Positions 16,733 through 64,000 of a stretch of 64,000 nt of DNA are shown piece by piece. The stretch covers positions 186,001 through 250,000 of the forward strand of contig NIVC01000856.1 of NCBI GenBank assembly GCA_002269645.1, given 5' to 3'. Every line of letters starts with the position of its first letter. Positions within the stretch are counted from its first letter, which is position 1. The position numbers and the translations under genes were made by a program. The DNA is from Macrostomum lignano (lineage: Eukaryota). The notes below the pieces were generated by a model. That model was given only the letters and a program-made list of their open reading frames with translations, did no database searches and was not told the origin of the DNA.

Positions 16733-17351
16733 TCGTCTTTACCAGCATATATTTCAGCGTAGGGTCTCTAGGCTAGTTTTGGGTTGGCTGGATTTAAAAT
16801 AAAAAGGCCTAATATCTGAACTTTTTAATTGTGTAAAATTTTGTATATGCATGCGCAGTAATGTTATGGTAATGTCTTCCCAGGGCATAGCTTTTTGACT
16901 TGGTGGACTGGAAAAACAGGACAAGTGGATATGATAAGCTAAGCTAAGCTAAGAGCCAAAAGGCTGGATAGAGCAGAAATCTAAAAGCCTAGGCTTAACT
17001 GTTTTGATTTTATTGTCAAGGAATCTGTAGTAAGCCTAGCCTAGTGACCGCAAAAGTTTGATAATGATACTAACTAGGCCCCTATAGAAATAAATAATTC
17101 ATACTGTGTTGTACTTTTGCAAAAGTCACTACAAATCAATTAGGGCCTAAGCCTAGGTTATTAAAAAATAAAGTCATGCCTATTTAGCATGATTATTATA
17201 CCCAATGAAGCAATGATGGCTATAGCTTGGCTATGGCTATACTATAGGCATAGGGGGCCTATTGTGTAGGGCTGGTACCTAAATTCTTTGTGACCTAGAC
17301 CTATGTCCTATGATGATAATACTATCTTATGTCATATGATCTATGATTATA

Positions 17352-48000: not shown

Positions 48001-49453
48001 GCCGAACATGCAATACCGACCGTTGGTGTGTAACATCAGCGTGCTCGTGTTGGTGCTGTCCTGGTACACCGGCAGCCGGATGCTTTCGCACTCCTCCCGG
48101 GACCCGATCCACCGGACATTGCCCAGCAGGATGCCCGCCTCCGGCTTGAAGATCGAGTCCAGCCCTGGTAATGGAGGAGGGAGGCTGGTCATTGCCTGTC
48201 TCTCTGCCTGCCTCTCTCCCTGCCTCTCTCCCTGCCTCTCTCCCTGCCTCTCTCCCTGCCTCTCTTCCTGCCTCTCTCCCTGCCTCTCTTCCTGCCTCTC
48301 TTCCTGCCTCTCTCCCTGCCTCTCTTCCTGCCTCTCTTCCTGCCTCTCTCCCTGCCTCTCTCCCTGCCCCTCTTACTGCCTCTCTTCCTGCCCCTCTTCC
48401 TGCCTCTCTTCCTGCCTGCCTCTCTTCCTGCCTCTCTCCCTGCCTCTCTTCCTGCCTCTCTCCCTGCCTCTCTGCCTGCCTCTCTCCCTGCCTCTCTCCC
48501 TTCCTCTCTCCCTTCCTTTCTCTCCCTTCCTTTCTCTCTCTGCCTCTCTCCCTGCCTCTCTCCCTTCCTCTCTCCCTTCCTCTCTCCCTTCCTCTCTCCC
48601 TTCTTCTCTCCCTTCCTATCTCCCTTCCTCTCTCCCTTCCTCTCTCCCTTCCTCTCTCCCTTCCTCTCTCCCTTCCTCTCTCCCTTCCTCTCTCCCTTCC
48701 TCTCTCCCTTCCTCTCTCCCTTCCTCTCTCCCTTCCTCTCTCCCTTCCCCTCTCTTTTCCTCTCTCCCTGCCTCTCCACCCTGCCTCTCTCCCCTCTCTC
48801 CCTTCCTTTCTCTCTCTGTCTCTCTCCCTGCCTCTCAGGCTGCCTCTCAGGCTGCCTCTCTCCCTGCCTCTCTCCCTGCCTCTCTTCCTGCCTCTCTCCC
48901 TGCCTCTCTTCCTGCCTCTCTCCCTGCCTCTCTCCCTCCCTCTCTCCCTGCCTCTCACCTGTCTCTCGCCTGCCTCCCTCCCTTCCTCTCTCTCTTCTTC
49001 TCTCTCTGCCTCTCTCCCTTCCCTCTCTTCCGGCTTCTCTCCCAGCCTCTCCTTCCCTACCCCAGTTAAACCAGCAGTCTCACATTGGAGAAACTGGTCC
49101 GACTCGGGCAAGTCGTTGCCGCCAACCAGGCCCAGGATGCTGCTCAGCAGGCTGCTGAACACGGTGCCGCACTCGGGCGACAGCTCCTGGAAGGCGTCGC
49201 CGCCTCGACGAGCCCGAAGCTCCACTGCCGAGGCCCGCAGCTTCTTGGCCGCCAGAGCCGGGTCGCGAGCCACCTCGCCAGCCGCGATGGCCAGAGCTCG
49301 CGCCAGCAGCTGCGGATTCACCCCCTCCTGCTGCTGCTGATTGTCTCTCCAAGAAGAAAAAGACGACGAAGAAGCAACGCAGCCTCCTCCTAGAAGAAAC
49401 AGCGCAAGCAAAGCCACCGGGAGGCTCCGATTTCTGCTACAACTGATCAGCAT
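39069..49453 (-). CDS. Nose resistant to fluoxetine-6 / O-acyltransferase-like protein (NRF domain + Acyl_transf_3); 12 exons, ~805 aa
   Basis: Exons 49453-49084, 48164-47859, 47432-47270, 46583-46498, 46407-46240, 44854-44460, 42985-42906, 42169-42020, 41889-41781, 41510-41318, 40816-40674, 39323-39069 (2418 nt). Motifs GILLGNVRWIGSREEC, CINGIRVLSIFWVILGH, SVDSFFMLSG, FYFHRYWRLTP, HTWYLANDMQ, YIKPYCRMGAY, PLARLSYCAYIVH, VEAPLLGLEK. Confidence 0.92.
39415..40600. repeat. 20-bp minisatellite with 480-bp higher-order duplication
   Basis: Unit AATGACCGATTTCAGCTCCC; lines starting at 39541 and 40021 are identical. Confidence 0.96.
40930..41165 (-). mobile_element. CORE-type tRNA SINE fragment, 5'-truncated
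   Basis: Minus strand reads GGTTCGATTC (B box) followed by CCTTGAGGAAGGCACTTAAC...CCCAGCTGTGAAATGGG, resembling the recalled CORE-SINE consensus CCTTGGGCAAGTCACTTAAC...CTGTAAAATGGG. Confidence 0.6.
42336..42870. repeat. 83/84-bp tandem repeat (167-bp dimer)
   Basis: TCAAGGTCA-anchored units at 42337, 42424, 42507, 42591, 42674, 42758, 42842. Confidence 0.92.
43335..43898 (-). CDS. Intronless EF-hand calcium-binding protein (calmodulin-like, ~187 aa) nested in intron 6 of the NRF-6-like gene
   Basis: Open frame with EF-hand loops DTEKRGFITFEG, DANRDGKITLRE, DEEETGQLEFRE. GC-rich codon usage like neighbouring exons. AATAAA on the minus strand at 43150-43145. An upstream in-frame ATG exists at 44024. 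Confidence 0.85.
   Translation of the reverse strand: MDGRQNSPRRSQQRSGKSQKFSSRQQSQQQPAAGAAARQKPDKQLLMKWFNDVDTEKRGFITFEGLKAVCKKDGLTESSALEMFEVLDANRDGKITLREYKLLLGIYPEEAREEETWQLIFENIDEEETGQLEFREVDKYFTTTFGQRIALGIRKQDLKKYQQTVGPGSTTFKTDDFIAWLRRERRG
44935..46032. repeat. 19-bp minisatellite
   Basis: Unit CTAGATCACTCTGATGAGA. Confidence 0.97.
46610..46935. repeat. 20-bp minisatellite
   Basis: Unit TATGACCAACTAGGATACTC. Confidence 0.93.
47515..47705. repeat. 31-bp minisatellite
   Basis: Unit TGACAGTCAATTACAGCTATATGGCAGCCTG. Confidence 0.9.
48198..49050. repeat. 12-bp CT-rich tandem repeat
   Basis: CCTCTCTCCCTG / CCTCTCTCCCTT units. Confidence 0.95.
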
Positions 49454-50034
49454 TGAGGCAAGCGGTAGAGAGCTGGAAACGCAGACAAGAGAACTTCTGC
49501 AACCCAGAACCGTCTGGGCGCTGTGCTTTTTCTTGGCCGCAAATTTAAATAAGCATCGCAAGGCGAAGCACGCAAGACGCAACCACCTGCTGAGGTTTTT
49601 ATCTAATCTGCCCTGGCTGAATAATGAAAGAGGCGTGCCGAGTCAGCCACGGCCTCTAAAGCGCCCAGGTGGGACCACCACTTCATTCGTCCGATTATTT
49701 TCTCCGTTCTAAAGGCTATCGCTGGGGGCTGATCTTGCATAAAACAAGTAGCAAAAAGAATTTCGGCTGCCTACCAGTGGAAACAGTTGGAAACGAAATT
49801 TTTCAGTCAACAAATTTGGCGACATTGTCCCGCCTCACAGCGGTGAGGCAAAGCTGCCAATTCCGCTGAATCCTGAGAACACGCATGTAAAAGTGCCGCC
49901 AATACATATACTGCACTGCACTCACGACACTCGCTCACACGGGGTGTGTAGCGGTCCAGACTTTCTATTAGTCTCACTCAGGCATGTACACTCTCTGCGA
50001 CTTGAGGGTTGGCTCTCATTGGTGTGAATCGCTG

Positions 50035-50630
50035 GGTTGCTGGGTTGCCTGGAAGGTTGCTGAGTTGTGTAAAAGGTTGTTGGATTGTCTAGAATTTCTC
50101 TGGGTTGTCTAAATGGTTGTTGGGTTGTCTAGATGGTTGTTGGGTTGTCTAGATGGTTGTTGGGTTGTCTAAATGGTTGTTGGGTTGTCTAGATGGTTGT
50201 TGGGTTGTCTAAATGGTTGTTGGGTTGTCTAAATGGTTGTTGGGTTGTCTAGATGGTTGTTGGGTTGTCTAGATGGTTGTTGGGTTGTCTAGATGGTTGT
50301 TGGGTTGTCTAGATGGTTGTTGGGTTGTCTAGATGGTTGTTGGGTTGTCTAGATGGTTGTTGGGTTGTCTAGATGGTTGTTGGGTTGTCTAGATGGTTCT
50401 TGGGTTGTCTAAATGGTTGTTGGGTTGTCTAGATGGTTGTTGGGTTGTCTAGATGGTTGTTGGGTTGTCTAGATGGTTGTTGGGTTGTCTAGATGGTTGC
50501 TGGGTTGTCTAGAAGGTTGCTAGGTTGTCTAGAAGGTTGCTGGGTTGTCTAGAAGGTTGCTGGGTTGTCTAGAAGGTTGCTGGGTTGTCTAGAAGGTTGC
50601 TGGGTTGCCTGGAAGTGCTGGGTTGTCTTG
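50035..50630. repeat. 20-bp minisatellite
   Basis: Unit GGTTGTTGGGTTGTCTAGAT. Confidence 0.95.
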
Positions 50631-51209
50631 AAGGGTATCAGTGCAGTAAGACCAGCTAATATCAAACAAGGGCAGTAGTCACTTGTGAAAATTTTGTTGA
50701 ACACGGTAGGGGTTCAACGTACTGGCAGAGGGTATTTGATATTTGATAAAGTCATTTAAGCAATTTGAGCACTTTTTGGAGCACGATTAACCTCGAGAGA
50801 GAGAGCGCAGTCGCATTTTTAGTAAATTGAGCTGATAAAACTCAAACAAAAATGTTTTGCAAGCCCTAGAATAGACTGGATTTGCGGATAGATAAAACTG
50901 GTGAGCTTATAAAGTAGCCCGAGCTTTTAAAATCAAGCCATATTTCGAAATAAAGACTCCGGTTTGGCGATAAAAGAGCTAAGCTGTGTTGGCTATCTCA
51001 CTTGATTTTTGTATCATTTCTGCTGTACCGACTAATTATTTAACTATAATCGATTTGTTATATCGAGATAAAGAGTATTTTTATAACAAATAAAATAGTT
51101 CGTATAACCAATAGGTACAAACTTTTTCAAGCTTGACTTACTGACTGCATTTGAGGCAATTCTGTCCATTTCGCTGGCTCCTGAGTACACGCAAGAGTGC
51201 CAATGCTGG

Positions 51210-51760
51210 GCTGGCGCCCCTGGGTGCTGGCGCCCCTGGGTGCTGGCGCCCCTGGGTGCTGGCGCCCCTGGGTGCTAAAGCCCCTGGTGCTAAAGCCTCT
51301 GATGCTAAAGCCTCTGGTGCTAAAGCCTCTGGTGCTAAAGCCCCTGGTGCTAAAGCCCCTGGTGCTAAAGCCCCTGGTGCTAAAGCCCCTGGTGCTAAAG
51401 CCCCTGGTGCTAAAGCCCCTGGAGCTAAAGCCCCTGGTGCTAAAGCCCCTGGTGCTAAAGCCCCTGGTGCTAAAGCCCCTGGTGCTAAAGCCTCTGATGC
51501 TAAAGCCTCTGGTGCTAAAGCCTCTGGTGCTAAAGCCCCTGGTGCTAAAGCCCCTGGTGCTAAAGCCCCTGGTGCTAAAGCCCCTGGTGCTAAAGCCCCT
51601 GGTGCTAAAGCCCCTGGTGCTAAAGCCCCTGGTGCTAAAGCCTCTGGTGCTAAAGCCCCTGGTGCTAAAGCCCCTGGTGCTAAAGCCCCTGGTGCTAAAG
51701 CCCCTGGTGCTAAAGCCTCTGGTGCTAAAGCCCCTGGTGCTAAAGCCCCTGGTGCTAAAG
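51210..51760. repeat. 15-bp minisatellite (copy 1)
   Basis: Unit GCTAAAGCCCCTGGT. Confidence 0.96.
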
Positions 51761-51952
51761 GCGATTCCGCTGACTGCTGAGTACACACAAGCGCGCCAAT
51801 ACTGTACGCAGGCACTCATCACACGCTCACAAAGGGTGTACAGCGGCCCTGGCTTTCTAATTGTCAAGTAGGTACAATCTGTTTCTTGGAGGTTGACTGT
51901 TTCGTGTAATCAATTTTTGAGTTGAATTGGTTCGTCACAGTTCATTCCGCTG

Positions 51953-54900
51953 TCACATCTTCCTGGAGGCGGTTGCGCCAACTCTGCGTTTCAACGGTGG
52001 CGTCACGTTCTCGTAGCCATCTGGAGAGCTGCTCAGCACCGCCGCCGCCTCCGCCTCCTCCGATGCAGCCGCCGCCGCCTCCGCCTCCTCCGATGCAGCC
52101 GCCGCCGCCTCCGCCTCCTCCGATGCAGCCGCCGCCGCCTCCGCCTCCTCCGATGCAGCCGCCGCCGCCTCCGCCTCCTCCGATGCAGCCGCCGCCGCCT
52201 CCGCCGCCGCCGCGGCCGCTGCCACAATCAGCTCGGCTGATGCGTCATCCGCTTCGCTGTCTGCGACCTTGGAGGGGGGGGATTAAATATACAGACAGTT
52301 ACAGATAAGCATAATCATTAAATATAGTCACAGACAGTTGCCGACAAGATGCTCGCACAGACGGCCTTCCATTTCTGCTGTTCATAAGACACACCGGCAG
52401 ACAAATATTGCACAGAACAGTTGCTACTGGCAGCAACAGTCAATATAGTTGTATAAGAAATATGCGTAGACAGACTACTTTAAGTAGCAAACGCAGCATA
52501 ATTTCAACGGGTCGCCATTATAAACCCGAAATATCACAATTCTGAAAAGCACCTTCCATCAATATCTCGAAAAATCATGAACACGAAATATCACAAACCT
52601 GAAATATCACGAACCCGAAATATCACGAACCCGAAATATCACAAACCCGAAATATCACGAACCCGAAATATCACAAGCCCGAAATATCACAAACCTGAAA
52701 TATCACGAACCCGAAATATCACGAACCCGAAATATCACAAACCTGAAATATCACAAACCCGAAATATCACAAGCCTGAAATATCACGAACCCGAAATATC
52801 ACAAACCCGAAATATCACGAACCCGAAATATCCCGAACCCGAAATATCACGAACCCGAAATATCACAAACCCGAAATATCACAAACCCGAAATATCACAA
52901 ACCCGAAATATCACAAACCCGAAATATCACGAACCCGAAATATCACAAACCCGAAATATCACGAACCCGAAATATCCCGAACCCGAAATATCACGAACCC
53001 GAAATATCACAAACCCGAAATATCACAAACCCGAAATATCACAAACCCGAAATATCACAAACCTGAAATATCACGAACCCGAAATATCACAAGAGAGTTC
53101 AGTAACTCGCACTGCCCGACGAACTTGAAGCGCGCTTCGCCAACGCAAATCCCAATAGTTGGAATTGCAAGCCCCGATCCCTATAGATCAGTATTTATCC
53201 CCTAAATAATTGCTCAGCCACTGTAGAGCAGTTGATGATCCCAGAGCTCTACTGGATTATTGCTTTTGCAGCTTCCGTTTCTGCTTCAAGCAATAGAAGA
53301 TAATTGCCGTCCAAAAAAAGTCAAAACGCTGTTGGTGCTGCGGCACGCTCGCTTGCGACATCTGCCTGTTTTGGCGGTGGCGGTGGCGGGGTGGGGAAGA
53401 GAACCATGGATGGACCATTCGAGATGAAGCTTTGAGAGAGACTGCGTGATGGAACAGATCGATACAAGCAATTGTAGTGAGCTTGTGCCTTGTTAGCCCC
53501 AGTTTGTGCGCGCATGAGAGCGAAAGAGAGTGGAGGCTGAGCTGCAATGATGTAGCAGCTCGAGTCTGCAGAGGATTCTGCATGGATTGATATGAAGCAA
53601 GAACACACTTCTTCTGTTGCTTCTGTTATATTATTCTGCGTGTCCGAAAATCGGTGCAAAACTTTTGTGCAAAAACGATGCTCCGAATGAAGTGCAACAG
53701 TGGGAGCTCTCACTTCAGGAGCATTGATGGCGGGGCGCCAACATTGTGTGAATCCATATTGCAATACATTTTTTCTTAGTAAATATCAGCACAGAACTTT
53801 ATAGCCTCAATTGAGCTGGGCACAGGCACCAAAGTCTGAAAGCGCAATTAGCTCATTTTGGGCACTGGTAAAAGTATATGGAGCCCCTGGTGCTGGCGCC
53901 CCTCGTGCTGAAGCCCCTGGTGCTGGCGCCCCTGGTGCTGAAGCCCCTGGTGCTAAAGCCCCTGGTGCTAAAGCCCCTGGTGCTAAAGCCCCTGGTGCTA
54001 AAGCCCCTGGTGCTAAAGCCCCTGGTGCTGGCACCCCTGGTGCTAAATCCCCTGGTGCTGGCACCCCTGGTGCTAAATCCCCTGGTGCTATAGCCCCTGG
54101 TGCTAAATCCCCTGGTGCTAAATCCCCTGGTGCTAAAGCCCCTGGTGCTAAATCCCCTGGTGCTAAAGCCCCTGGTGCTAAATCCCCTGGTGCTAAATCC
54201 CCTGTTGCTAAAGCCCCTGGTGCTGGCACCCCTAGGGATAAAGCCCCTGTTGCTAAAGCCCCTGGTGCTGGCACCCCTGGTGCTGGCACCCCTGGTGCTG
54301 GCACCCCTGGTGCTGGCACCCCTGGTGCTGGCACCCCTGGTGCTGGCACCCCTGGTGCTGGCACCCCTGGTGCTGGCACCCCTGGTGCTGGCACCCCTGG
54401 TGCTAAATCCCCTGGTGCTAAAGCCCCTGGTGCTAAAGCCCCTGGTGCTAAAGCCCCTGGTGCTAAAGCCCCTGGTGCTAAAGCCCCTGTTGCTAAAGCG
54501 CCTGTTGCTAAAGCCCCTGGTGCTAAAGCCTCTGTTGCTAAAGCCCCTGGTGCTAAAGCCTCTGTTGCTAAAGCCCCTGGTGCTAAAGCCCTTGGTGCTA
54601 CGATAGACAAACCCGATAAAAACACATTGACTAAATTTGGTACATTTACCTTGTCTTTTCTAATTGCTCCTACTGGAAGTGAAAATCGAGAGCGGTATTT
54701 GAGAGTCTAAGGTATTGTAATGCATTCACAAAGTCTGCTGTAAATAGCTATAGACGGCTATAGATTATGCCTTGTAATTTAATAAATCCTGCCGATATGT
54801 AGCGAGGAAAACTTTATAAAGCTAAAATATAAATGTGGCACGAGCGAAAAAAGAGGACAGAGGCTGGTAGCTTTAATCCGATTTGCCAACCTCAATGTGG

Positions 54901-57797
54901 TGAATGGCGGTGAGCAGCAGGTGCCCGAACTCGTTCGCCACCACCGACTTCCAGGCGTCGCGAAATGCGCTCAGGCAGGCCATGGCGACGCGCGATTCCG
55001 GGGCTAGAAGGTCGTGAGCTCGAGCCGCGACTAGCAGCATGCTGCCCAGTGCCTGCAAGTGGTTGGGAATCAAATTGTGATGATGGGAGGAGGCGGAAAA
55101 TTAATAAGCAGTTTAGAACTCAGATTAGGAATTCAAAAGGATTGGATGTTTGGGATGGGATATTTGAGATGGGATATTTGAGATGGGATATTTGAGATGT
55201 GATATTTGAGATGGGATATTTGAGATGGGATATTTGAGATGGGAAATTTGAGATGGGATATTTGAGATGGGATATTTGAGATGGGATATTTGAGATGGGA
55301 TATTTGAGATGTGATATTTGAGATGGGATATTTGAGATGGGATATTTGAGATGGGAAATTTGAGATGGGATATTTGAGATGGGATATTTGAGATGGGATA
55401 TTTGAGATGGGATATTTAAGATGGGATATTTGAGATGGGATATTTGAGATGGGATATTTGAGATGGGATATTTGAGATGGGATATTTGAGATGGGATATG
55501 TTGGGATCAGACTGTAGAGGAAAGCCGTGACGGGCCAGCACCTGCAGGTGATACTCCAGCCAGTCAGCGCCCGCAGTCCAGCAATCGTCTCCGGTCGGCA
55601 GTCGAGCCGCGACGCCGCTCGCCGCTACGCAGGCGCGCCAGGCGCTTTCCAGCCGGCGCCATCGATAATTGGCGCCAGTCGGCGGCGCGTCAGCAGCTTC
55701 ATCGGCCTCGGCGATGAGGCCCGTCTGGCCGGCCAGCCGGAGAAGCTCCTCAGCGCTCGGCGGCAGCTGCTGTCGGCGGAGTCGGCGCAGGCGGGACAGC
55801 ACGCAGTCGGGCTGGGCGGCAGCGGACAGGCCGTCCAGGCAGTGTCGGGTGTGCGCGAAGGCCTCCTCGCGTAGGCGCTGGGCGCAGCGGCTCTCCGGAT
55901 GCCGCAGGTGCAGCTTGCTGGCCGCCAGCAGCAGCGGCAGCGCCTTCTCCAGACTCGACCGGGTGAGCGCCAGACGACAGCGGGCCGGCTCCGACCTCAG
56001 GTCGGCCTGGCGCTCACCGGACAGGCGGCCGAGCTGCACCAGGTGCTCGCCAAGGCTGGCAAAGGCCGGCATGAAGTCGGCGAATCTGATGGTGTGTAAC
56101 GTGGCGCAGTGATCAGATTTTGGTTGCAATGGTGTCCACAGCAGAAAGGGGGCCGTAGCCCAGCGGTAGCGCAGCTGCTCTGGTGTGCCAGCGACCCAGG
56201 CTCGATTCCAAGTGCAGTCACATTAATTTGAGGCTAAATTGGAAGCTCGGCTTGGCTCTACTGAGCTGTTCGTGGCCGGCACTGACACCACCTCCAACAC
56301 CATCCGCTGGGCGCTGCTGTACGCCTGTCTCTACCCGGAGTGCCAGGCTCGAGTCCAGGCCGAGATTGACGCCCAGATCGGCCGCAATCGCCTGCCGGAG
56401 CAAGTGTAGGCAAGTGTACATGCCAGTGTAAGTGTAGGCAAGTGTAAGTGCAGGCAAGTGTACATGCCTGCCTAACGACAAAATAAAGTCAGGGCCGCTG
56501 TGCACTCCTGTGTGTGCCTGTGCGCATGACTGCGTACGTATCCGAGCGCTTGTGTTCCTGCTCAGGAAAGTCGGCGGAATGTGACAATGTCGCTTAAATT
56601 AATAGAATCAGCTGACAATTTACACAGCAGGATGCTCTGAGCTGAGCCGGTTCTCTAAAATCTCCAGAGAGCCTCCTTCCCCTGTACCTGGTGCAGTCCT
56701 CCAGGCACTCCAGGCAGGCCGTCGCTCGCTCCCCGCAGGCCAGCAGCTGCTGCAGGTTCAAACGGTCCGCCAGCGCCATCGTCCGCGTCATCGCTTCGAC
56801 CAGACGACGCGCGGCGAGTCGAACCGCGTCGCCGTCTGTAGCGAACTTGGGCGACAGCACGGTGGTTGTCATTGTCAGACGAGCCACGGCTCGACCGGCG
56901 GCGGCCGCGTCGCTACACGCAGCGTCGATGGCCTCGGCTAGTCGAGGAGGCGACTCGACGGCAACGCGCCGGCCAGCTGTGGCGAACTGGTCTGCGGCGC
57001 GGGCCACCCAGGCCCCGGTGTCGGCCAACAGCTGCGCTGTGGATTCGGCGGGCGGCGCCGAGGAAGAGCGCAGGCTGATCTCATCGTCACCGCCTGAGCG
57101 GCGCTTCCGGAACTTGAACAGGTTCTGCAGCTGCGGGCAGGTGAGTGTTGCTGTTGGTTGGTGTTGGTATTGGTGCCGAGGTTGCTAGTGCCGCGGGTGT
57201 TGGTGCACGGGGTGTTGGTGCATCGGGTGTTGGTGTATGGGGTTTTGTGCATGGAGTGTTGGTGCACGGGGTGTTAGTGTATGGGGTGTTGTTGTATAGG
57301 GTGTTGGTGTATGGGGTGTTGTTGTATAGGGTGTTGGTGTATGGGGTGTTGGTGTATGGGGTGTTGGTGTATGGGGTGTTGGTGCACGGGGTGTTGGTGT
57401 ATGGGGTGTTGGTGTATGGGGTGTTGATGTATGGGGTGTTGGTGCCGGGGCTGTTGTTGTATGGGGTGTTGGTGCATGGGTGTTGATTCATGGCGTGTTG
57501 CATTTGGTGCTGGGTGTGCGGGGTGTTGGTGCCCAGATTTAATTAAATCTCAACTATTTTGTTTCAATAAAACTTAAACTTAAAACTGTTTCGATAAACA
57601 TGAATTTCTCTCACATGCTTTACCAAGGGAAGCAACGCATTTTCTACCGACTTAGTCTCTGTGGTGGCCAGCAGGGAAGAGATTTCATCAAGGCTGGCAG
57701 TGCTGCCAGTCGAACTTTCGGCCGGAAACTCGGATTGAATTTCTATTTTAGTTTGAATAAATCTACTAGGCGCTCTATTTGGAGAGTAATAGCTCAT
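51953..57797 (-). CDS. CTNNAL1: Alpha-catulin-like (vinculin/alpha-catenin family), apparently shortened; 3' exons uncertain
   Basis: Exons 57797-57615, 57130-56688, 56085-55542, 55052-54891, probable last exon 52267-51953; extra exon(s) at ~53100-53660 are possible. Motifs TKSVENALLPLVKH, AARRLVEAMTRTMALADRL, LSGERQADL, LEKALPLLLAASKLHLRHP, APESRVAMACLSAFRDAW match recalled alpha-catulin segments. Confidence 0.75.
52039..52197. repeat. 30-bp coding tandem repeat, 5 copies (AAAAASEEAE on the minus strand)
   Basis: Unit GCCGCCGCCGCCTCCGCCTCCTCCGATGCA. Confidence 0.9.
52578..53090. repeat. 14-bp minisatellite
   Basis: Unit ACCCGAAATATCAC-like. Confidence 0.93.
53881..54600. repeat. 15-bp minisatellite (copy 2, same family as 51210)
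   Basis: Units GCTAAAGCCCCTGGT / GCTGGCACCCCTGGT. Confidence 0.96.
55150..55498. repeat. 14-bp minisatellite
   Basis: Unit GAGATGGGATATTT. Confidence 0.96.
56149..56220 (+). mobile_element. tRNA-derived SINE-like head (Pol III A and B boxes)
   Basis: 72 nt starting GGGGCCGTAGCCCAGCGG; A-box-like TAGCCCAGCGG 56156-56166, B-box-like GGCTCGATTCC 56199-56209. Acceptor and anticodon stems are imperfect, so not a functional tRNA. Confidence 0.6.
56260..56402 (+). pseudogene. 143-bp inverted duplicate of part of the P450 I-helix exon (source 59995-60137)
   Basis: Read-through comparison gives 142/143 identity to the reverse complement of 59995-60137 (one C/T difference); encodes TELFVAGTDTTSNTIRWALLYACLYPECQARVQAEIDAQIGRNRLPE. 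Confidence 0.95.
57145..57530. repeat. 15-bp GT-rich minisatellite
   Basis: Unit GTGTTGGTGTATGGG. Confidence 0.92.
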
Positions 57798-58772
57798 TGC
57801 GTTTCTCCTAGGCGATTTAAAATGCAGGTTCAAAGCAGAACAGAGACTATATATTTGCATCCGATATTTTCCGGATTTCGATTTCACGCTTCTTGACTTT
57901 TAAACTAGTGTTAAAAATCGGCTAGAAGTAAAACAAAATAAAAGAAACGGCTGTTTGTATTTAAAAATAAATACAATAACTATAAGATTTTATTTATCTA
58001 ATATTATATTTCGCGAGCAGTCGAGTTTAATTACGAGTACCACATTTTCGTCATTTTTACCGATTTAAGTTTTACGATTCAAGCGGTCAGAATTAATAAA
58101 AAAAGTTATATATATTTGGGCTAGTTAAAGTGAGCCGTTTTGAGAACAAAATCAAATTTATTTTGAATTGAAATTAGAAACTTTATGATTTGAGAAAATG
58201 GTGGAATATCAATACACTGATTATACATTTAACTAAAAGAAGTAATTATTGAAAAAAATTGAATTATAGCATTGCTAGTGCATGCTAGTGCATTTCCGAT
58301 CAGGATTGGGCACTTTACGCTCGTATGTGCCATTTTGTCAGTTATTAAGCTTAGTCTCAAATCACGCCATTTTAAAGTAAAATACTCTTCCCATTTGCAC
58401 GAGACTTAACAGGAGTCACAGGACGAGTTTTACTTAGCTTTACTGAGTTTTACCAAAATTTTCATTCACTGAGCAATAACATATATGCTTTAAAATTCAT
58501 AAACTTTTTTGTACTAACTATGACGTATAATAACCGTTTTCATTCTACCAAACTACGCCACAGAAAACCTTGATACATTTTAGAGGCTGAAAAGTGAACC
58601 AATATGCATTTACATGCATACAATATCTTAGCCAAATCTTCATGTAATAAGCTAAAGACATCGTATACATACTATCACCCAGACACGATAAAAAAGCTCA
58701 TCTATTTTGTTTTACTTAACACGTTTCAAATGAAGTTTCTTCGAAACCAAAATTACGAGCCCTCCGTTCAGT

Positions 58773-61700
58773 TCAGCAGGAATCATCGGCGATTCTCTGC
58801 GGCTGCCTGGCCGAGAAAATGATCCGATGCGCGCCAGGCGCGTGCACGATGCCGTCGCTTCCAATTTTGATGTCCTCCAGATTCTTCACGCTGTCCGGGT
58901 GCAGCCGGGCGCTGTGCTGCTGGAGGATCCCGGCGATAAAGAGGAACAGCTCCTGGCGGGCCAGACTCTCGCCAAGGCAGGCTCGCTTACCGACGCCGAA
59001 TGGTACGAGGTGCTCGTTCGGTTGGTACTCGCCCGTGTCGACTGCCAGGAATCGTTCGGGCTGGAAAGCTTCCGGACTGGACCAGAGCTCCGGGTCGTGG
59101 TGGATGCCGTATAGGTTGGTCATGATCAGATCGTCCGAAGAGATGTCGTAGCCCTGGAGTCAAAGCGAATTAACGGCTTTTGGCTTTTTGAAGGTGCTTC
59201 GGCAAGTGGTGTTGGCACTGGGTTTTCTGGTCTTTGTATTGGATTTCATGTTGAGGCTTGGGTGTTTGGGCTGGTGTATTGGGGCTGGGGTGTTGAGGCT
59301 GGGGTGTTGAGGCTGGGGTGTTGGGGCTGGGGTGTTGAGGCTGGGGTGTTGGGGCTGGTGTATTGGGGCTGGGGTGTTGAGGCTGGAGTGTTGAGGCTGG
59401 GGTGTTGGGGCTGGGGTGTTGGGGCTGGGGTGTTGAGGCTGGGGTGTTGGGGCTGGGGTGTTGGGGCTGGGGTGTTGGGGGCTGTGGTTTAGAGGCTGGG
59501 ATGTTGGGGCTGGGGTGTTGGGGCTGGGGTGTTGAGGCTGGGGTGTTGGGGCTGGGGTGTGGGGGGCTGTGGTTTAGAGGCTGGGATGTTGGGGCTGGGG
59601 TGTTGAGGCTGGGGTGTTGGGGCTGGGGTGTTGGGCTGGGGTGTTGGGGCTGGGGTGTTGGGGCTGGGGTGTTGGGGCTGTAGTGTTGGGGCTGGAGTAT
59701 GGGTTGTGGTGTTTTGAGACTAAGTAGTTAATGCTTTGGGTGTTGGGGCTGGGTAATTAGTGACTAGGCTGTTGATGCTGAGGTTTCAGCGTTTTGCGGT
59801 GTAGGTACGTGGGTTGCTAGAGCCTGACTATTTCGGCGGTACCATTCAGCCATCGATTCACCATCGTGCAAAAGCTCACCATAAACTCAACATCGCGGGT
59901 GCACCTGTGTAAAACAGCAAACGGCGCCAGAGTGGCAAATCGTTGAACCTCGTCAATAAACGCCAGCGTGTAGGGCATCCGTTTGCGGTCCCGGTGCTCC
60001 GGCAGGCGATTGCGGCCAATCTGGGCGTCAATCTCGGCCTGGACTCGAGCCTGGCACTCCGGGTAGAGACAGGCGTACAGCAGCGCCCAGCGGATGGTGT
60101 TGGAGGTGGTGTCAGTGCCGGCCACGAACAGCTCAGTCAAGGTGCGCTTCAGTTGGAAGTCGTCGAATGTGTGGTCCTAAGGATTGTCATGAATGTGTTA
60201 TTGTAACTTGAGTTGAGTGCACTATTCTACGCCGGGCCAGTCTGGCCGGCATCTCCCCCCCCCCTCCTCAGATATTTTCTGACTCACCCCCTTCACTTCT
60301 GCGCGTGCGTACCCTCCCCCCTCTCTGCCTAGGCCTTGTCTGTTGTTCAACCCCCATTCTCTGCGTGCGACCCCCCCATTCTTTGCGTGCGACCCCGCCC
60401 CATTCTTTTGTTAGCTTTGCTGCCCCGCCCCTGTTTGTGATTGGTTGCCAGTCCCAGTCTGCCGTGCTGCGCCCCGGCGATTGGCTGGTACGGCTCATGT
60501 TTTTCCTATGCTGATTTCTAAGCCCCCTTTTCTGCCTTTATCCCGCGCCCTCAACCCCCAGTTTGCTGCCTATTTATTCGGACCCCCTTGAGACCCCATT
60601 CTCGTCATCTTCGTGGCTCTCCGGTGATTTTGCTAGCGTTGGTTGCTATTAAGTGTCCGAATTGCCCTACAAATACAATTAAAATATCGATACTCCCACT
60701 GCTCTGTCGGCGCTGTTCCCGAGTTGTACGACTGAAATCGCGGCTGGTAAGCCTTCCAATTTGCAAGTCATTTGGGTCTGCATCTGTACTAGGCACCTTA
60801 GAGGGATTAAGTGCGTCGTACGCCGGTCCCACCCCAAGCAGCTCTGCGTCGTACGCGAGTCTGTAGGCTGTCGTGCGTCGTACGCTCGAGCAGCCTAGTC
60901 CCGACGGACACCGCGTCGTACGCGTGTCAGTGGAGGACCGCAGCCGGGGTCAGTACGCGAACCCGGGTCTGGGAAAGGGGCACGAAAGGACCGAGCCCTT
61001 GAGCCCCATCACAACAGGATGGAGAACATCACATCGTCGCGTTATTGTCCATAGGCGTAGGAACGTTTCAAAAAGTGGGGGGGGGGCAGGTTCAGTGCCG
61101 GATTTAGGGGGAGGGGGGCGCACAAGGTCGAGTTAGATTTTTCTATTTCTTTATATTGAAAATGCACATTTATCATGTACCAATTATTTTTAGAATCAAT
61201 GTTGTCACCACTCATTTTAGCGCCGCAGGCACTCATTTTAGCGCCGCAGACACTCATTTTAGCGCCGCAGACACTCATTTTAGCGCCGCAGACACTCATT
61301 TTAGCGCCGCAGACACTCATTTTAGCGCCGCAGACACTCATTTTAGCGCCGCAGACACTCATTTTAGCGCCGCAGACACTCATTTTAGCGCCGCAGGCGC
61401 TATGTTTTGTCGCTCTGCAGCAAAATGCATTCATGCAAAGCAGCAAAAATAAAAAATAAGAGTAAAAAATGAGCTAAAAGTCTACATTTTGCATTTAAAA
61501 TGTGAAGGGGCCAGATACCATTACTGCCCCCCCGTTCCTACGCCTATGTTATTTTCATCCGTCAACCGCGCCATTCACAACTGGCTGAGCCACAAACACC
61601 AGCTGCACTGGAACAGCTGCTTCGAATATCGGCAAACGCAAGCTGCGATGCCTGCTATGAACCGGAAATTTCATATAATACCTGATTTCTTTAAACAAAA

Positions 61701-63078
61701 TTGACCCTAGAGAGATTTGTATTGATCATATTTTGGTCAACACATCACCTTCAACACTACAACAAAGCGCAAAGACGTCACCTGGCTGCTCGCTAAGGTT
61801 GGACGAGCTCTGACTACCCCCGGACCGGATCCGTGACCTTGCGCGCATTCGTCCGAATCGTCCGATTCGTTGGGCGATGAGTTGTGAAAGAAGCTGCTCT
61901 TCTGAGAAATGAAACCCCTTTAATTCAATGCTCATTTCTGTTCCCCATTTAGTCGATTGCACTCACTGAAGAGGATACAGTCGGCCGGATGCACTCCCTG
62001 TGTGACAGTACTTCTGTAGCTTTAATTAAGAGCTTGGATACCCCCTCCGACCAGGAACGTTTAAAACTGCATGGTGATTTCTGAATTTTCATTCAGCTAC
62101 CAATAGTTCGCTACAATACCTTCTTCCTTCCGTTCAGCTTCTCCTGCTCCATCAGAAAAGCGTCCAGGAAGTCGTTTGGCGAGCTGACTCCGGCCAGCTG
62201 GGCCCGGTGAGCGTCGATTTGCATCTGGCAGAAGCCGTGCGTCACCTTCAGATTCCGCTGCACAACGTACACGTCAACGCCGAGCAGCTCTAGCAGGCGC
62301 ATCACTCCCGGGATCTGGTACAGCAACGGAAATCCCACCGGGATGAATCTGGCCAAGTCGCCGCCCTGCAGATTCTCCTGGGTGGCCGCGAGGAAAGCTT
62401 CGAACCGGTCGTCCTGGGAGCCAGCCCGATAGCCGAACAGCATCACGCTGATGACGTTGGCGATGGCCCGGCAGAGCACTTCAGTGGTGTCCACGCCAGC
62501 TTCGCCAGCCGTGTTGAACTGATCGCGCAGGTCCTGCAGCTCCTGATGGATTGAGTCCTCGGTGCCGGCTCGCGCAAATCCGAAATCGCGAAGAACCTGA
62601 CGATGTGTGGAGTTGCATGGTACTTACGGTGGTGCAACATACTCACTGGGTTGATCATTCATTACTTAAACTCTACTGTGAGGTGTTCCTAATAAAGAAC
62701 GTAATTTTTAAGATTATAAAATCTGGAAAGGTTTATATTTGTGCCTTGGGCATCTCAAATGTCCACGTCCGACCAACGAAAGGCCCACCTTGAGAGCAAA
62801 CCGCCTGTGCTCGCGCCACAGCTCGCCTTCTGAGGACACGATGCCCTTTCCGTGCGTAAGGCTGTTTATATAGTTGGAATTCATCCGACCGCTGAACACA
62901 TCGCCGAATTCCTGCGAGGCCAGAGCCTCCTTGACGGCCGCATAGCTGTTCAACACGACGAACCGACGTGCGCCGAGTCTGTAGCTGACCAGGTCGCCGT
63001 AGCGTTTGCGCCAATCTGCGTGAGCAGCCAGGAATGTCGGCCGAGGCAGGTTCGGCAGGTTGCCTAGCAGAGGCCATC
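58773..63078 (-). CDS. Cytochrome P450, CYP2 clan; 5'-incomplete (membrane-anchor exon presumably beyond the window end)
   Basis: Exons 63078-62789, 62596-62120, 60176-59880, 59153-58773. Motifs GWPLLGNL, WREHRRFAL (WxxxR), ELFVAGTDTT (I-helix), EVQR (ExxR), FQPERF (PERF), PFGVGKRACLG (heme). The first visible exon starts at an AG acceptor in phase 1. Confidence 0.95.
59260..59700. repeat. 14-bp G-rich tandem repeat
   Basis: Unit GGGGCTGGGGTGTT. Confidence 0.93.
60393..60484. promoter_or_regulatory. Promoter-like cluster (2 GC boxes, 2 inverted CCAAT boxes) in a P450 intron
   Basis: CCCCGCCCC at 60393 and 60423; GATTGG at 60439 and 60479. Motif presence only. Confidence 0.3.
60803..60971. 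other. Array of four (plus one variant) hairpins with invariant GCGTCGTACGC apex
   Basis: Motif at 60813, 60846, 60875 and 60913, each embedded in a different extended inverted repeat. Confidence 0.8.
61050..61548. mobile_element. hAT-type MITE (499 bp) with internal 21-bp minisatellite
   Basis: TIRs CATAGGCGTAGGAACG / CGTTCCTACGCCTATG (perfect 16 bp); 8-bp TSD ttattgtc / ttattttc. Confidence 0.85.
61208..61398. repeat. 21-bp minisatellite inside the second hAT MITE
   Basis: Unit ACTCATTTTAGCGCCGCAGAC. Confidence 0.95.
61557..61800 (+). mobile_element. Short LINE fragment (post-RNase H region), interrupted upstream by a hAT MITE
   Basis: SSVNRAIHNWLSHKHQLHWNSCFEYRQTQAAMP has the same I..W....H...W......RQ....P pattern as the 18800-18930 fragment. 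Confidence 0.5.
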
Positions 63079-63214
63079 CTAAAATGAGGATTTATTTGGG
63101 ATTTCGCTTTGATACGAGCTGCATCTCAAAACCTTTGAAACCGGACAAAATTTCACGACGCCTAATGGCACCTCAACTCAACCACGGATTGATCTCAAAT
63201 TGGAGATTAGTACC

Positions 63215-64000
63215 TGAATTTTATTATCTCTAATTGGAGATTAGTACCTGGATGACGTGATTTCTAATTGGAGATTAATACCTGGATGATGTGATCTCTA
63301 ATTGGAGAAATTAGTACCTGGATTTTATGATCTCTAATTGGAGATAAATACCTGAATGATGTGATCTCTAATTGGAGAAATTAGTACCTGGATTTTATGA
63401 TCTCTAATTGGAGATAAATACCTGAATGACGTGATCTCTAATTGGAGATAAATACCTGAATGATGTGATTTCTAATTGGAGATAAATACCTGAATGACGT
63501 GATTTCTAATTGGAGATAAATACCTGAATGATGTGATTTCTAATTGGAGATAAATACCTGAATGACGTGATTTCTAATTGGAGATAAATACCTGAATGAT
63601 GTGATTTCTAATTGGAGATAAATACCTGAATGACGTGATTTCTAATTGGAGATAAATACCTGAATGATGTGATTTCTAATTGGAGATAAATACCTGAATG
63701 ACGTGATTTCTAATTGGAGATTAATACCTGGATGACGTGATCTCTAATTGGAGATAAATACCTGAATGATGTGATTTCTAATTGGAGATAAATACCTGAA
63801 TGACGTGATTTCTAATTGGAGATAAATACCTGAATGATGTGATTTCTAATTGGAGATAAATACCTGAATGACGTGATTTCTAATTGGAGATAAATACCTG
63901 AATGATGTGATTTCTAATTGGAGATAAATACCTGAATGACGTGATTTCTAATTGGAGATAAATACCTGAATGATGTGATTTCTAATTGGAGATAAATACC
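63215..64000. repeat. 34-bp minisatellite running off the window end
   Basis: Unit TAATTGGAGATAAATACCTGAATGACGTGATTTC. Confidence 0.96.

What the first reader, a model, noticed from the sequence alone, without database searches (positions are those of the whole stretch)
56149..56470. Near-identical inverted P450 exon fragment behind a tRNA-like Pol III head inside the catulin intron
Seen: 56260-56402 is 142/143 identical to the reverse complement of 59995-60137 (P450 I-helix exon, 3.6 kb away). It is preceded ~40 bp upstream by a tRNA-like A/B-box head and followed by a short CAAGTGTA-type tandem tail, which is a SINE-like architecture. Inference: catulin pre-mRNA or its excised intron carries 143 nt antisense to the P450 mRNA, and a read-through P450-catulin transcript would form a long hairpin (endo-siRNA substrate). 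Alternatively Pol III makes a sense decoy. The high identity means very recent origin or gene conversion.
Basis: partly seen in the sequence, partly recalled or inferred. Interest (0 to 1): 0.7.

Follow-up and report, generated by a model that had tools for sequence, protein, structure and literature searches.

The report
Inverted P450 exon scrap: repair scar
A 143-base piece of a cytochrome P450 exon really was copied backwards into an intron of the neighbouring gene in the flatworm Macrostomum lignano, but it looks like an ordinary scar of DNA break repair, not a mobile SINE or a demonstrated regulatory device.

Summary
Window 56260-56402 is 142/143 identical to the reverse complement of 59995-60137, which lies inside a P450 exon. 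The copy sits in a 602-nt intron of a vinculin/alpha-catenin-family gene on the minus strand.

The window is Macrostomum lignano Mlig_3_7, scaffold NIVC01000856.1. This neopolyploid genome holds three paralogous copies of the locus.
- A second copy (L005, NIVC01004475.1) carries the identical fragment, tail and junctions. Its own exon matches the fragment 143/143.
- The third copy (L001, NIVC01000019.1) keeps the "tRNA-like head" and the downstream repeat. In place of the 196-nt insert (143-nt fragment plus 53-nt tail) it has 13 unrelated bases.

So the head predates the fragment and is separate from it. It is not a detectable tRNA (ARAGORN and Rfam negative). It recurs nowhere else in about 132 kb of M. 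lignano DNA.

The "tail" is a stutter of partial copies of the right flank. No target-site duplication or poly(A) is evident at the junctions read.

Best reading: one deletion-insertion made by template switching during break repair or replication. It dates after the split from L001 (3.5% SNPs) and before the window/L005 split (1.1%). The antisense and hairpin geometry is correct but untested. Low interest.

The parts
56260..56402 (+). 143-nt copy of the interior of the P450 I-helix exon. It reads P450-sense on the + strand, so it is antisense to the host gene.
   Evidence: 142/143 to the window exon and 143/143 to the L005 exon. Absent from L001.
59995..60137 (-). Donor segment inside P450 exon 60176-59880.
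   Evidence: It carries one private synonymous change (ATC to ATT) that arose after the copy was made.
56403..56455 (+). 53-nt stutter tail: repeated partial copies (7-13 nt) of the right flank AAGTGTACATGCC, plus one AAGTGCAG that also occurs at 56210-56217. The A at 56402 could belong to either the fragment or the tail (1-nt junction homology).
   Evidence: Absent from L001 and identical in L005.
56456..56600 (+). Pre-existing flank, a copy of a roughly 150-nt dispersed repeat. Its first 13 nt served as template for the stutter.
   Evidence: Present in L001 and L005. Related copies at 49992-49850(-) and 51870-51764(-).
56149..56259 (+). Pre-existing left flank. It includes the A/B-box-like 'head' (56149-56209), which is not part of the insertion.
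   Evidence: Window 56178-56259 aligns to L001 17277-17196 at 95%.
56086..56687 (-). Host intron: GT at 56687-56686 and AG at 56087-56086. It is 602 nt long, about a third of it the insert.
   Evidence: Joining the exons is in frame and gives an unbroken alignment to the alpha-catenin N-domain.
56688..57127 (-). Upstream coding exon of the vinculin/alpha-catenin-family host gene.
55560..56085 (-). Downstream coding exon of the host gene. Its 3' limit was not determined.
59880..60176 (-). P450 exon containing the donor segment (I-helix region).
58773..59153 (-). Last P450 exon (heme-binding region and stop). It lies inside the 3.6-kb spacer, about 1.6 kb upstream of the first recognised host exon.

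Best explanation
This is a single deletion-insertion scar. An intron of the alpha-catenin-like gene broke, or a replication fork stalled there, between ...GGCTTGGCTCT and AAGTGTACATGCC.... A free 3' end switched template to the neighbouring P450 exon 3.6 kb away on the opposite strand and copied 143 nt. It then made several abortive short copies of the right flank (the AAGTGTA-type stutter) and was sealed. Taking L001 as the ancestral state, 13 nt were lost.

The event happened once. It falls on the branch leading to two of the three paralogous subgenome copies of Macrostomum lignano, after they split from the third. Both descendants inherited it. The adjacent tRNA-like motif and the downstream dispersed repeat were already in the intron and played no part. 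The insert is most likely neutral.

Shown: presence and absence among the paralogs, identity of the donor lineage, composition of the tail, and the absence of SINE hallmarks.
Inferred: the order of the steps, and the type of repair (polymerase-theta-like end joining, or MMBIR/FoSTeS-type replicative template switching).
For: 1. L001 has 13 nt (GCTCGTACAATTG) where the window has the 196-nt insert. The flanks, including the head and the downstream repeat, align on both sides.
2. L005, a separately assembled scaffold that differs from the window by 1.1% SNPs and many indels, carries the identical fragment, tail and junctions. Its own exon equals the fragment 143/143.
3. In the three-way and five-way comparisons the fragment shares two variants with the window and L005 exons against L001. 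At the single fragment/window-exon difference it keeps the base shared by L005 and L001. The donor is therefore the cis exon lineage, and the window exon mutated later.
4. SNP divergence is 3.5% window-L001 against 1.1% window-L005. If the fragment were older than the L001 split, about 4 fragment-exon differences would be expected. The observed counts are 1 and 0.
5. The tail decomposes into partial copies of the right flank. The right junction has 1 nt of homology, and no target-site duplication or poly(A) is evident in the sequence read.
6. A small deletion (7-13 bp), single-nucleotide homology and inserts copied from nearby sequence are the published signature of polymerase-theta end joining (PMC4490562).
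7. Indels dominate paralog divergence in this genome (PMC10733133). The three paralogs show 31 indels of 25 bp or more over the aligned stretch (window about 50.2-63.4 kb).
Against: There is no outgroup, so the polarity (gain in window+L005 versus loss in L001) rests on the dating argument (p roughly 0.02-0.09) and on parsimony. A 143-nt insert copied from 3.6 kb away is longer and more distant than typical polymerase-theta templated inserts. The left junction has no microhomology. The insertion point coincides with the 5' edge of a dispersed repeat copy, which could hint at a role for that element. All three copies come from one assembly project (one inbred line), and raw reads were not examined.
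Confidence: 0.75

Rival explanations
1. The fragment is older than all three paralogs, and L001 lost it secondarily by a 196-nt deletion with 13 nt of filler. Identity to the exon was kept by intrachromosomal gene conversion between the inverted arms.
For: Without an outgroup the indel cannot be polarised directly. Inverted repeats 3.6 kb apart can undergo gene conversion (general knowledge).
Against: The fragment shows 0-1 differences from the cis exons, where about 4 are expected given 3.5-4.3% local divergence to L001. The private T in the window exon has not been transferred to the fragment, so no conversion has occurred since the window/L005 split. This reading needs both a precise loss and conversion.
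Confidence: 0.1
2. A retroelement made it. Reverse transcriptase copying the downstream dispersed repeat switched template to P450 mRNA, giving a chimeric retrocopy of the U6/L1 type. Alternatively, a transposon captured the fragment (Pack-MULE- or Helitron-like capture).
For: The fragment abuts the 5' edge of a roughly 150-nt dispersed repeat copy and is in the orientation expected for a 5' template switch. The fragment lies wholly within an exon, so an RNA template cannot be excluded.
Against: L001 has the same repeat copy at the same site with the same flanks but no fragment, so the repeat was there first. No target-site duplication, poly(A) or terminal repeats are evident at the junctions read. 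There is no second copy of fragment+repeat in about 132 kb searched. The donor is the immediate cis neighbour, which fits a DNA template nearby.
Confidence: 0.06
3. It is a tRNA-derived SINE, or a Pol III unit, whose body is the P450 fragment. It would make a sense 'decoy' RNA.
For: A-box-like and B-box-like motifs (10/11 each against the consensus recalled from memory) with tRNA-like spacing lie 50 nt upstream of the fragment.
Against: The head is present without the fragment in L001. No tRNA is detected by ARAGORN or Rfam in either version. The fold is no better than shuffles. There is no other copy in about 132 kb. No TTTT terminator follows for over 1 kb. The A-box half of the head is heavily altered between paralogs.
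Confidence: 0.02
4. Whatever its origin, the insert is a retained regulatory module. Host intron RNA, or a P450-to-host read-through precursor, forms 143-bp dsRNA with P450 sequence and feeds endo-siRNA or editing pathways that tune the P450 copies.
For: The geometry is right: both genes are on the minus strand, about 1.6 kb apart, and the duplex is predicted at -344.8 kcal/mol. Multi-gene precursor transcripts are reported for almost 7% of assembled M. lignano transcripts (PMC5730564). The host exons are under purifying selection, so the host gene is probably expressed (14 synonymous against 6 nonsynonymous codon differences).
Against: No expression or small-RNA data were available. Zero substitutions in the fragment between the window and L005 is not significant: about 0.5-1.3 are expected at the 0.3-0.9% divergence of the flanking intron. 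One of the three paralogs lacks the insert. The host gene is not annotated in GenBank.
Confidence: 0.05
5. Assembly artefact, such as a chimeric read or a mis-join.
For: Mlig_3_7 is a PacBio-based assembly of a repeat-rich neopolyploid with known redundancy (PMC5730564; PMC10733133).
Against: The identical insert and junctions occur in two different scaffolds that differ by 1.1% SNPs, many indels and an 837-bp private insertion. The fragment keeps an ancestral base that the neighbouring window exon has lost.
Confidence: 0.02

Closest known systems
Templated insertions ('delins') of polymerase-theta-mediated end joining (C. elegans; PMC4490562)
   Same: A small deletion at the site (13 nt, against the published 7-13 bp). 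Single-nucleotide homology at one junction. Inserted sequence identical to nearby DNA. Several short abortive copies of the flank next to the junction.
   Different: The main insert is 143 nt and was copied from 3.6 kb away in inverted orientation, which is longer and farther than the usual flank-derived inserts. The left junction has no homology. Dependence on POLQ is unknown in this flatworm.
Replicative template switching (FoSTeS/MMBIR) and SDSA-type 'filler DNA' at break sites (general knowledge)
   Same: An inverted copy of a nearby segment, more than one switch in a single event, and no transposon hallmarks.
   Different: Microhomology at the switch points is minimal (0-1 nt). The event is small and isolated, with no larger rearrangement.
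tRNA-derived SINEs
   Same: A/B-box-like motifs lie upstream and a short repetitive stretch lies downstream of a central 'body'.
   Different: The head predates the body and stays in place without it. There is no tRNA fold, no family of copies and no evident target-site duplication. The 'tail' is copied from the flank.
Hairpin-RNA / endo-siRNA inverted-repeat loci and natural antisense transcripts (general knowledge, e.g. Drosophila hpRNA genes)
   Same: A near-perfect inverted repeat of gene sequence lies on one potential transcript, and intronic antisense to a neighbouring mRNA is present.
   Different: The stem is only 143 bp with a 3.6-kb loop that contains exons of two genes. There is no evidence of transcription as one unit, of small RNAs, or of selection.
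Chimeric retrocopies by RT template switching (U6/L1 type) and transposon gene-fragment capture (Pack-MULE, Helitron)
   Same: A gene fragment is juxtaposed to the 5' edge of a dispersed repeat.
   Different: The repeat copy is older than the fragment (L001). There is no evident target-site duplication, poly(A) or terminal repeats, and only a single instance.

Membership tests
tRNA-derived SINE | tRNA-related 5' head with internal Pol III A and B boxes | tested here: inconclusive
   Box-like motifs match 10/11 each with tRNA-like spacing (consensus recalled from memory). No tRNA by ARAGORN at default or by Rfam at E<=10. Fold z=+0.74.
tRNA-derived SINE | Head, body and tail insert as one unit, so empty sites lack all three | tested here: not met
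   L001 keeps the head and the downstream sequence and lacks only the fragment and stutter.
tRNA-derived SINE | Many dispersed copies in the genome | tested here: not met
   No second copy of the head or the fragment unit in the window plus L001-L003 (about 132 kb) other than the orthologous site. The sample is small.
tRNA-derived SINE | Target-site duplication and an A-rich or simple-repeat 3' tail of the element's own | tested here: not met
   No duplication is evident at 56259/56260 versus 56455/56456 in the sequence read. The tail consists of partial copies of the right flank.
Templated insertion by alternative end joining (TMEJ-like) | The insert is identical to sequence elsewhere near the break | tested here: met
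   143/143 to the cis exon in L005 and 142/143 in the window. Tail pieces match the flank.
Templated insertion by alternative end joining (TMEJ-like) | Accompanying small deletion at the site | tested here: met
   13 nt present in L001 are missing in the window and L005. This assumes that L001 represents the ancestral state.
Templated insertion by alternative end joining (TMEJ-like) | One to a few nucleotides of homology at the junctions | tested here: inconclusive
   1 nt (A at 56402) at the fragment/tail junction and none at the left junction.
Templated insertion by alternative end joining (TMEJ-like) | Short insert templated within the immediate flanks | tested here: not met
   The main insert is 143 nt from 3.6 kb away, inverted. 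Only the stutter part meets this feature.
Templated insertion by alternative end joining (TMEJ-like) | Dependence on polymerase theta | not testable with these tools
   Needs genetics in M. lignano.
Hairpin-RNA / endo-siRNA locus | Both arms transcribed on one RNA, with small RNAs from the stem | not testable with these tools
   No RNA data were available. Only the geometry and the duplex energy were computed.
Hairpin-RNA / endo-siRNA locus | Arms conserved beyond neutral expectation | tested here: inconclusive
   0 differences between the window and L005 fragments, against about 0.5-1.3 expected.
Chimeric retrocopy / transposon capture | Fragment and carrier element arrive together, with target-site duplication, poly(A) or terminal repeats | tested here: not met
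   The carrier repeat is present without the fragment in L001. No such hallmarks are evident at the junctions read.

The most novel reading that the evidence does not exclude
In two of the three subgenome copies of M. lignano, the alpha-catenin-like pre-mRNA intron, or a P450-to-host read-through precursor of the kind reported in this trans-splicing species, pairs with P450 exon sequence over 143 bp. It could then act in cis and in trans on all three near-identical P450 copies (141-143/143) through endo-siRNA or RNA editing. That would be a newly born regulatory link created by a repair accident.
Probability: 0.05. Interest if true: 0.6.

Novelty: new member of a known kind. Interest (0 to 1): 0.22.

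Why it matters
It gives a clean, dated example of a long templated insertion: 143 nt, inverted, from 3.6 kb away, with stutter and a 13-nt loss. The example is caught between two subgenome splits of a neopolyploid flatworm whose paralogs diverge mainly by indels. This helps in understanding how that genome diversifies, and it shows how gene-derived inverted repeats, the raw material for antisense or hairpin RNAs, can arise without transposons. It also warns against reading 'SINE architecture' from a chance adjacency of box-like motifs. No function is shown.

Tried and rejected
- ARAGORN on the window and all loci found no tRNA. Relaxed thresholds gave mutually inconsistent calls.
- Rfam found nothing at gathering thresholds, and at E<=10 nothing tRNA-like around either version of the head.
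- Exact-product look-ups of the two ORFs spanning the insert (95 aa on the minus strand, 56 aa on the plus strand), intended to find independent contigs: nothing on record.
- Protein search with the host gene's two joined exons found no hit at E<=1e-5. The gene is not annotated in any of the three scaffolds. GenBank annotation excluded transcripts overlapping repeats (PMC5730564), which may explain this.
A candidate next host exon (55100-54876) gave no alpha-catenin match in the PDB, so the 3' part of the host gene is unresolved and the 'catulin' label is unverified.
- More distant P450 paralogs as donor were rejected: L002 and L003 are only 80-83% identical over 46-60 nt.
- A literature search for Macrostomum SINEs returned nothing.
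- The metagenome, bacterial genome, phage and plasmid collections were not used, because they cannot contain this flatworm locus.
Full report
**1. The observation**

Window 56260-56402 (+) and 59995-60137 form a 143-nt inverted repeat, 99% complementary, with 3592 nt between the arms. BLAST gives 142/143 with E about 1e-67 to 1e-70, so chance is excluded.

- The + strand of the fragment translates to the P450 I-helix region (PF00067, E=1.1e-13).
- The P450 gene is on the minus strand, with exons including 62599-62120, 60176-59880 and 59153-58773.
- The donor segment starts 39 nt inside exon 60176-59880 and ends 115 nt before its end. It is therefore not an exon-shaped unit.
- The AAGTGTA-type tail is real.

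**2. Host gene and intron**

Two minus-strand ORFs flank the fragment. Joined at GT (56687-56686) and AG (56087-56086), they are in frame. They align without interruption to the N-terminal domain of alpha-catenin (PDB 4ons, E=5e-18). The Pfam Vinculin match is E=5e-7, below the curated cut-off.

The fragment therefore lies in a genuine 602-nt intron of a vinculin/alpha-catenin-family gene. 'Catulin' specifically was not verified. The 3' part of the gene could not be traced.

Between paralogs the two exons show 14 synonymous against 6 nonsynonymous codon differences, which points to a functional gene. Yet the gene is absent from the GenBank annotation of all three scaffolds and from the protein collection. 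A possible reason is that GenBank submission excluded transcripts overlapping repeat annotations (PMC5730564).

**3. Organism and paralogs**

The P450 is Macrostomum lignano BOX15_Mlig013417. Its cluster holds g1 and an identical g2/g3 pair.

| Locus | Scaffold | Relation to the window |
|---|---|---|
| L004 | NIVC01000856.1 | 100% identical to window 48773-64000, so the window is Mlig_3_7 |
| L001 | NIVC01000019.1 | Paralogous copy, 3.5% SNP divergence |
| L005 | NIVC01004475.1 | Paralogous copy, 1.1% SNP divergence |

These figures fit the published picture of three young subgenomes: about 2.2% SNPs genome-wide, with divergence dominated by indels (PMC10733133).

**4. The key comparison**

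In L001 the intron aligns to the window on both sides of the fragment. This includes the B-box half of the 'head', the sequence up to ...GGCTTGGCTCT, and from AAGTGTACATGCC onward. Window 56260-56455 (143-nt fragment plus 53-nt tail) is replaced there by 13 nt, GCTCGTACAATTG.

L005 carries the whole intron at 610/612 identity. Its fragment, tail and both junctions are identical to the window's.

Across the 143 nt:
- The L005 exon equals both fragments.
- The window exon has one private synonymous T.
- The L001 exon differs at two other sites.

The simplest history is one copying event from the cis exon on the branch ancestral to window+L005. The window exon then acquired one later substitution.

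Had the fragment existed before the L001 split, about 4 fragment-exon differences would be expected from the local divergence. The observed counts are 1 and 0.

Two separately assembled scaffolds with the same insert, together with the retained ancestral base, make an assembly artefact very unlikely.

**5. What the 'SINE' parts are**

*Head.* ARAGORN and Rfam detect no tRNA in either paralog's version. The fold is no better than shuffled sequence. The head recurs nowhere else in the window or in L001-L003, about 132 kb in all. Its A-box half is heavily altered between paralogs. No TTTT run follows for over 1 kb on the + strand. The head was in the intron before the fragment arrived.

*Tail.* It is a stutter of 7-13-nt partial copies of the right flank, AAGTGTA(CATGCC), plus an AAGTGCAG that also occurs at 56210-56217.

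*Right flank.* It belongs to a roughly 150-nt dispersed repeat with two other copies in the window. That copy is present in L001 without the fragment.

No target-site duplication, poly(A) or terminal repeats are evident at the junctions read.

**6. Mechanism**

The scar has four features:
- loss of 13 nt;
- a long copy from a nearby template on the opposite strand;
- repeated abortive copying of the flank;
- 1-nt homology at one junction.

This is the pattern of template switching during break repair or replication. It shares the published signature of polymerase-theta end joining: 7-13-bp deletions, single-nucleotide homology and inserts copied from nearby DNA (PMC4490562).

The 143-nt length, the 3.6-kb distance and the blunt left junction fit an SDSA- or MMBIR-type switch at least as well. 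The enzyme cannot be assigned here.

Among 31 indels of 25 bp or more separating the three paralogs over the aligned stretch (window about 50.2-63.4 kb):
- 24 are tandem-array changes;
- 6 have no source within the locus;
- only this one is an inverted copy of distant unique sequence.

**7. Consequences**

The host pre-mRNA would contain 143 nt antisense to the P450 mRNA. A P450-to-host read-through RNA could form a 143-bp stem, predicted at -344.8 kcal/mol with the single difference as a G-U pair. Multi-gene precursors are documented in this species (PMC5730564).

Nothing here shows transcription, small RNAs or selection. The absence of substitutions between the two fragment copies is what neutrality predicts at this age.

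From general knowledge, the inverted arms could also mediate inversion of the intervening 3.6 kb. All three paralogs are collinear over this stretch.

**8. Verdict**

The feature is real and correctly located. Its origin is recent, though older than the latest paralog split. It is not a SINE, not a Pol III unit and not an artefact. It is a new instance of a known mutational class, with a small untested chance of regulatory use.

Noticed in passing
window 60184-61020: An 837-bp insertion private to the window paralog, absent from L001 and L005. It ends 6-8 nt upstream of the acceptor AG of the donor P450 exon. ATCCT sits at both edges, possibly a 5-bp target-site duplication. No other copy was found in the window or L001-L003. 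It could weaken splicing of this P450 copy.
   Followed up: partly
window 56456-56600 (+), 49992-49850 (-), 51870-51764 (-): A roughly 150-nt dispersed repeat family at 76-83% identity. The copies at 49992 and 51870 abut minisatellite arrays. The P450 fragment was inserted exactly at the 5' edge of the intronic copy.
   Followed up: partly
window 56149-56185 vs L001 about 17277-17320: The A-box half of the 'head' differs between paralogs by a dense cluster of mismatches plus 8-nt and 4-nt indels, while the B-box half is 95% identical. This looks like a second local replacement event or a conversion. Both versions still resemble an A box.
   Followed up: no
window 51206-51760 & 53882-54600; 1945-2300 & 61168-61420; 57195-57500 & 59249-59695: The window is packed with minisatellites of 14-34-bp units. 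Several arrays at distant sites share the same unit. Most large indels between the three paralogs are copy-number changes in these arrays.
   Followed up: partly
window 55560-57127 (-) and its equivalents in L001, L004 and L005: The alpha-catenin-like gene appears to be under purifying selection, yet it is not annotated in any of the three scaffolds and has no match in the protein collection. Only its N-terminal roughly 320 residues were identified, and the next annotated gene (NRF/acyltransferase) starts near window 49594.
   Followed up: partly
window 63190-64000 and beyond the window end: The first P450 exon lies outside the window (L004 10001-10147, about 450-600 nt past position 64000). 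The first intron is filled by a 34-bp tandem array that runs off the window end.
   Followed up: no
window 57701-57787: An 86-bp segment in the P450/host intergenic region is present in the window and L001 but deleted in L005. The L005 junction has a few altered bases, so this is another delins-type difference.
   Followed up: no
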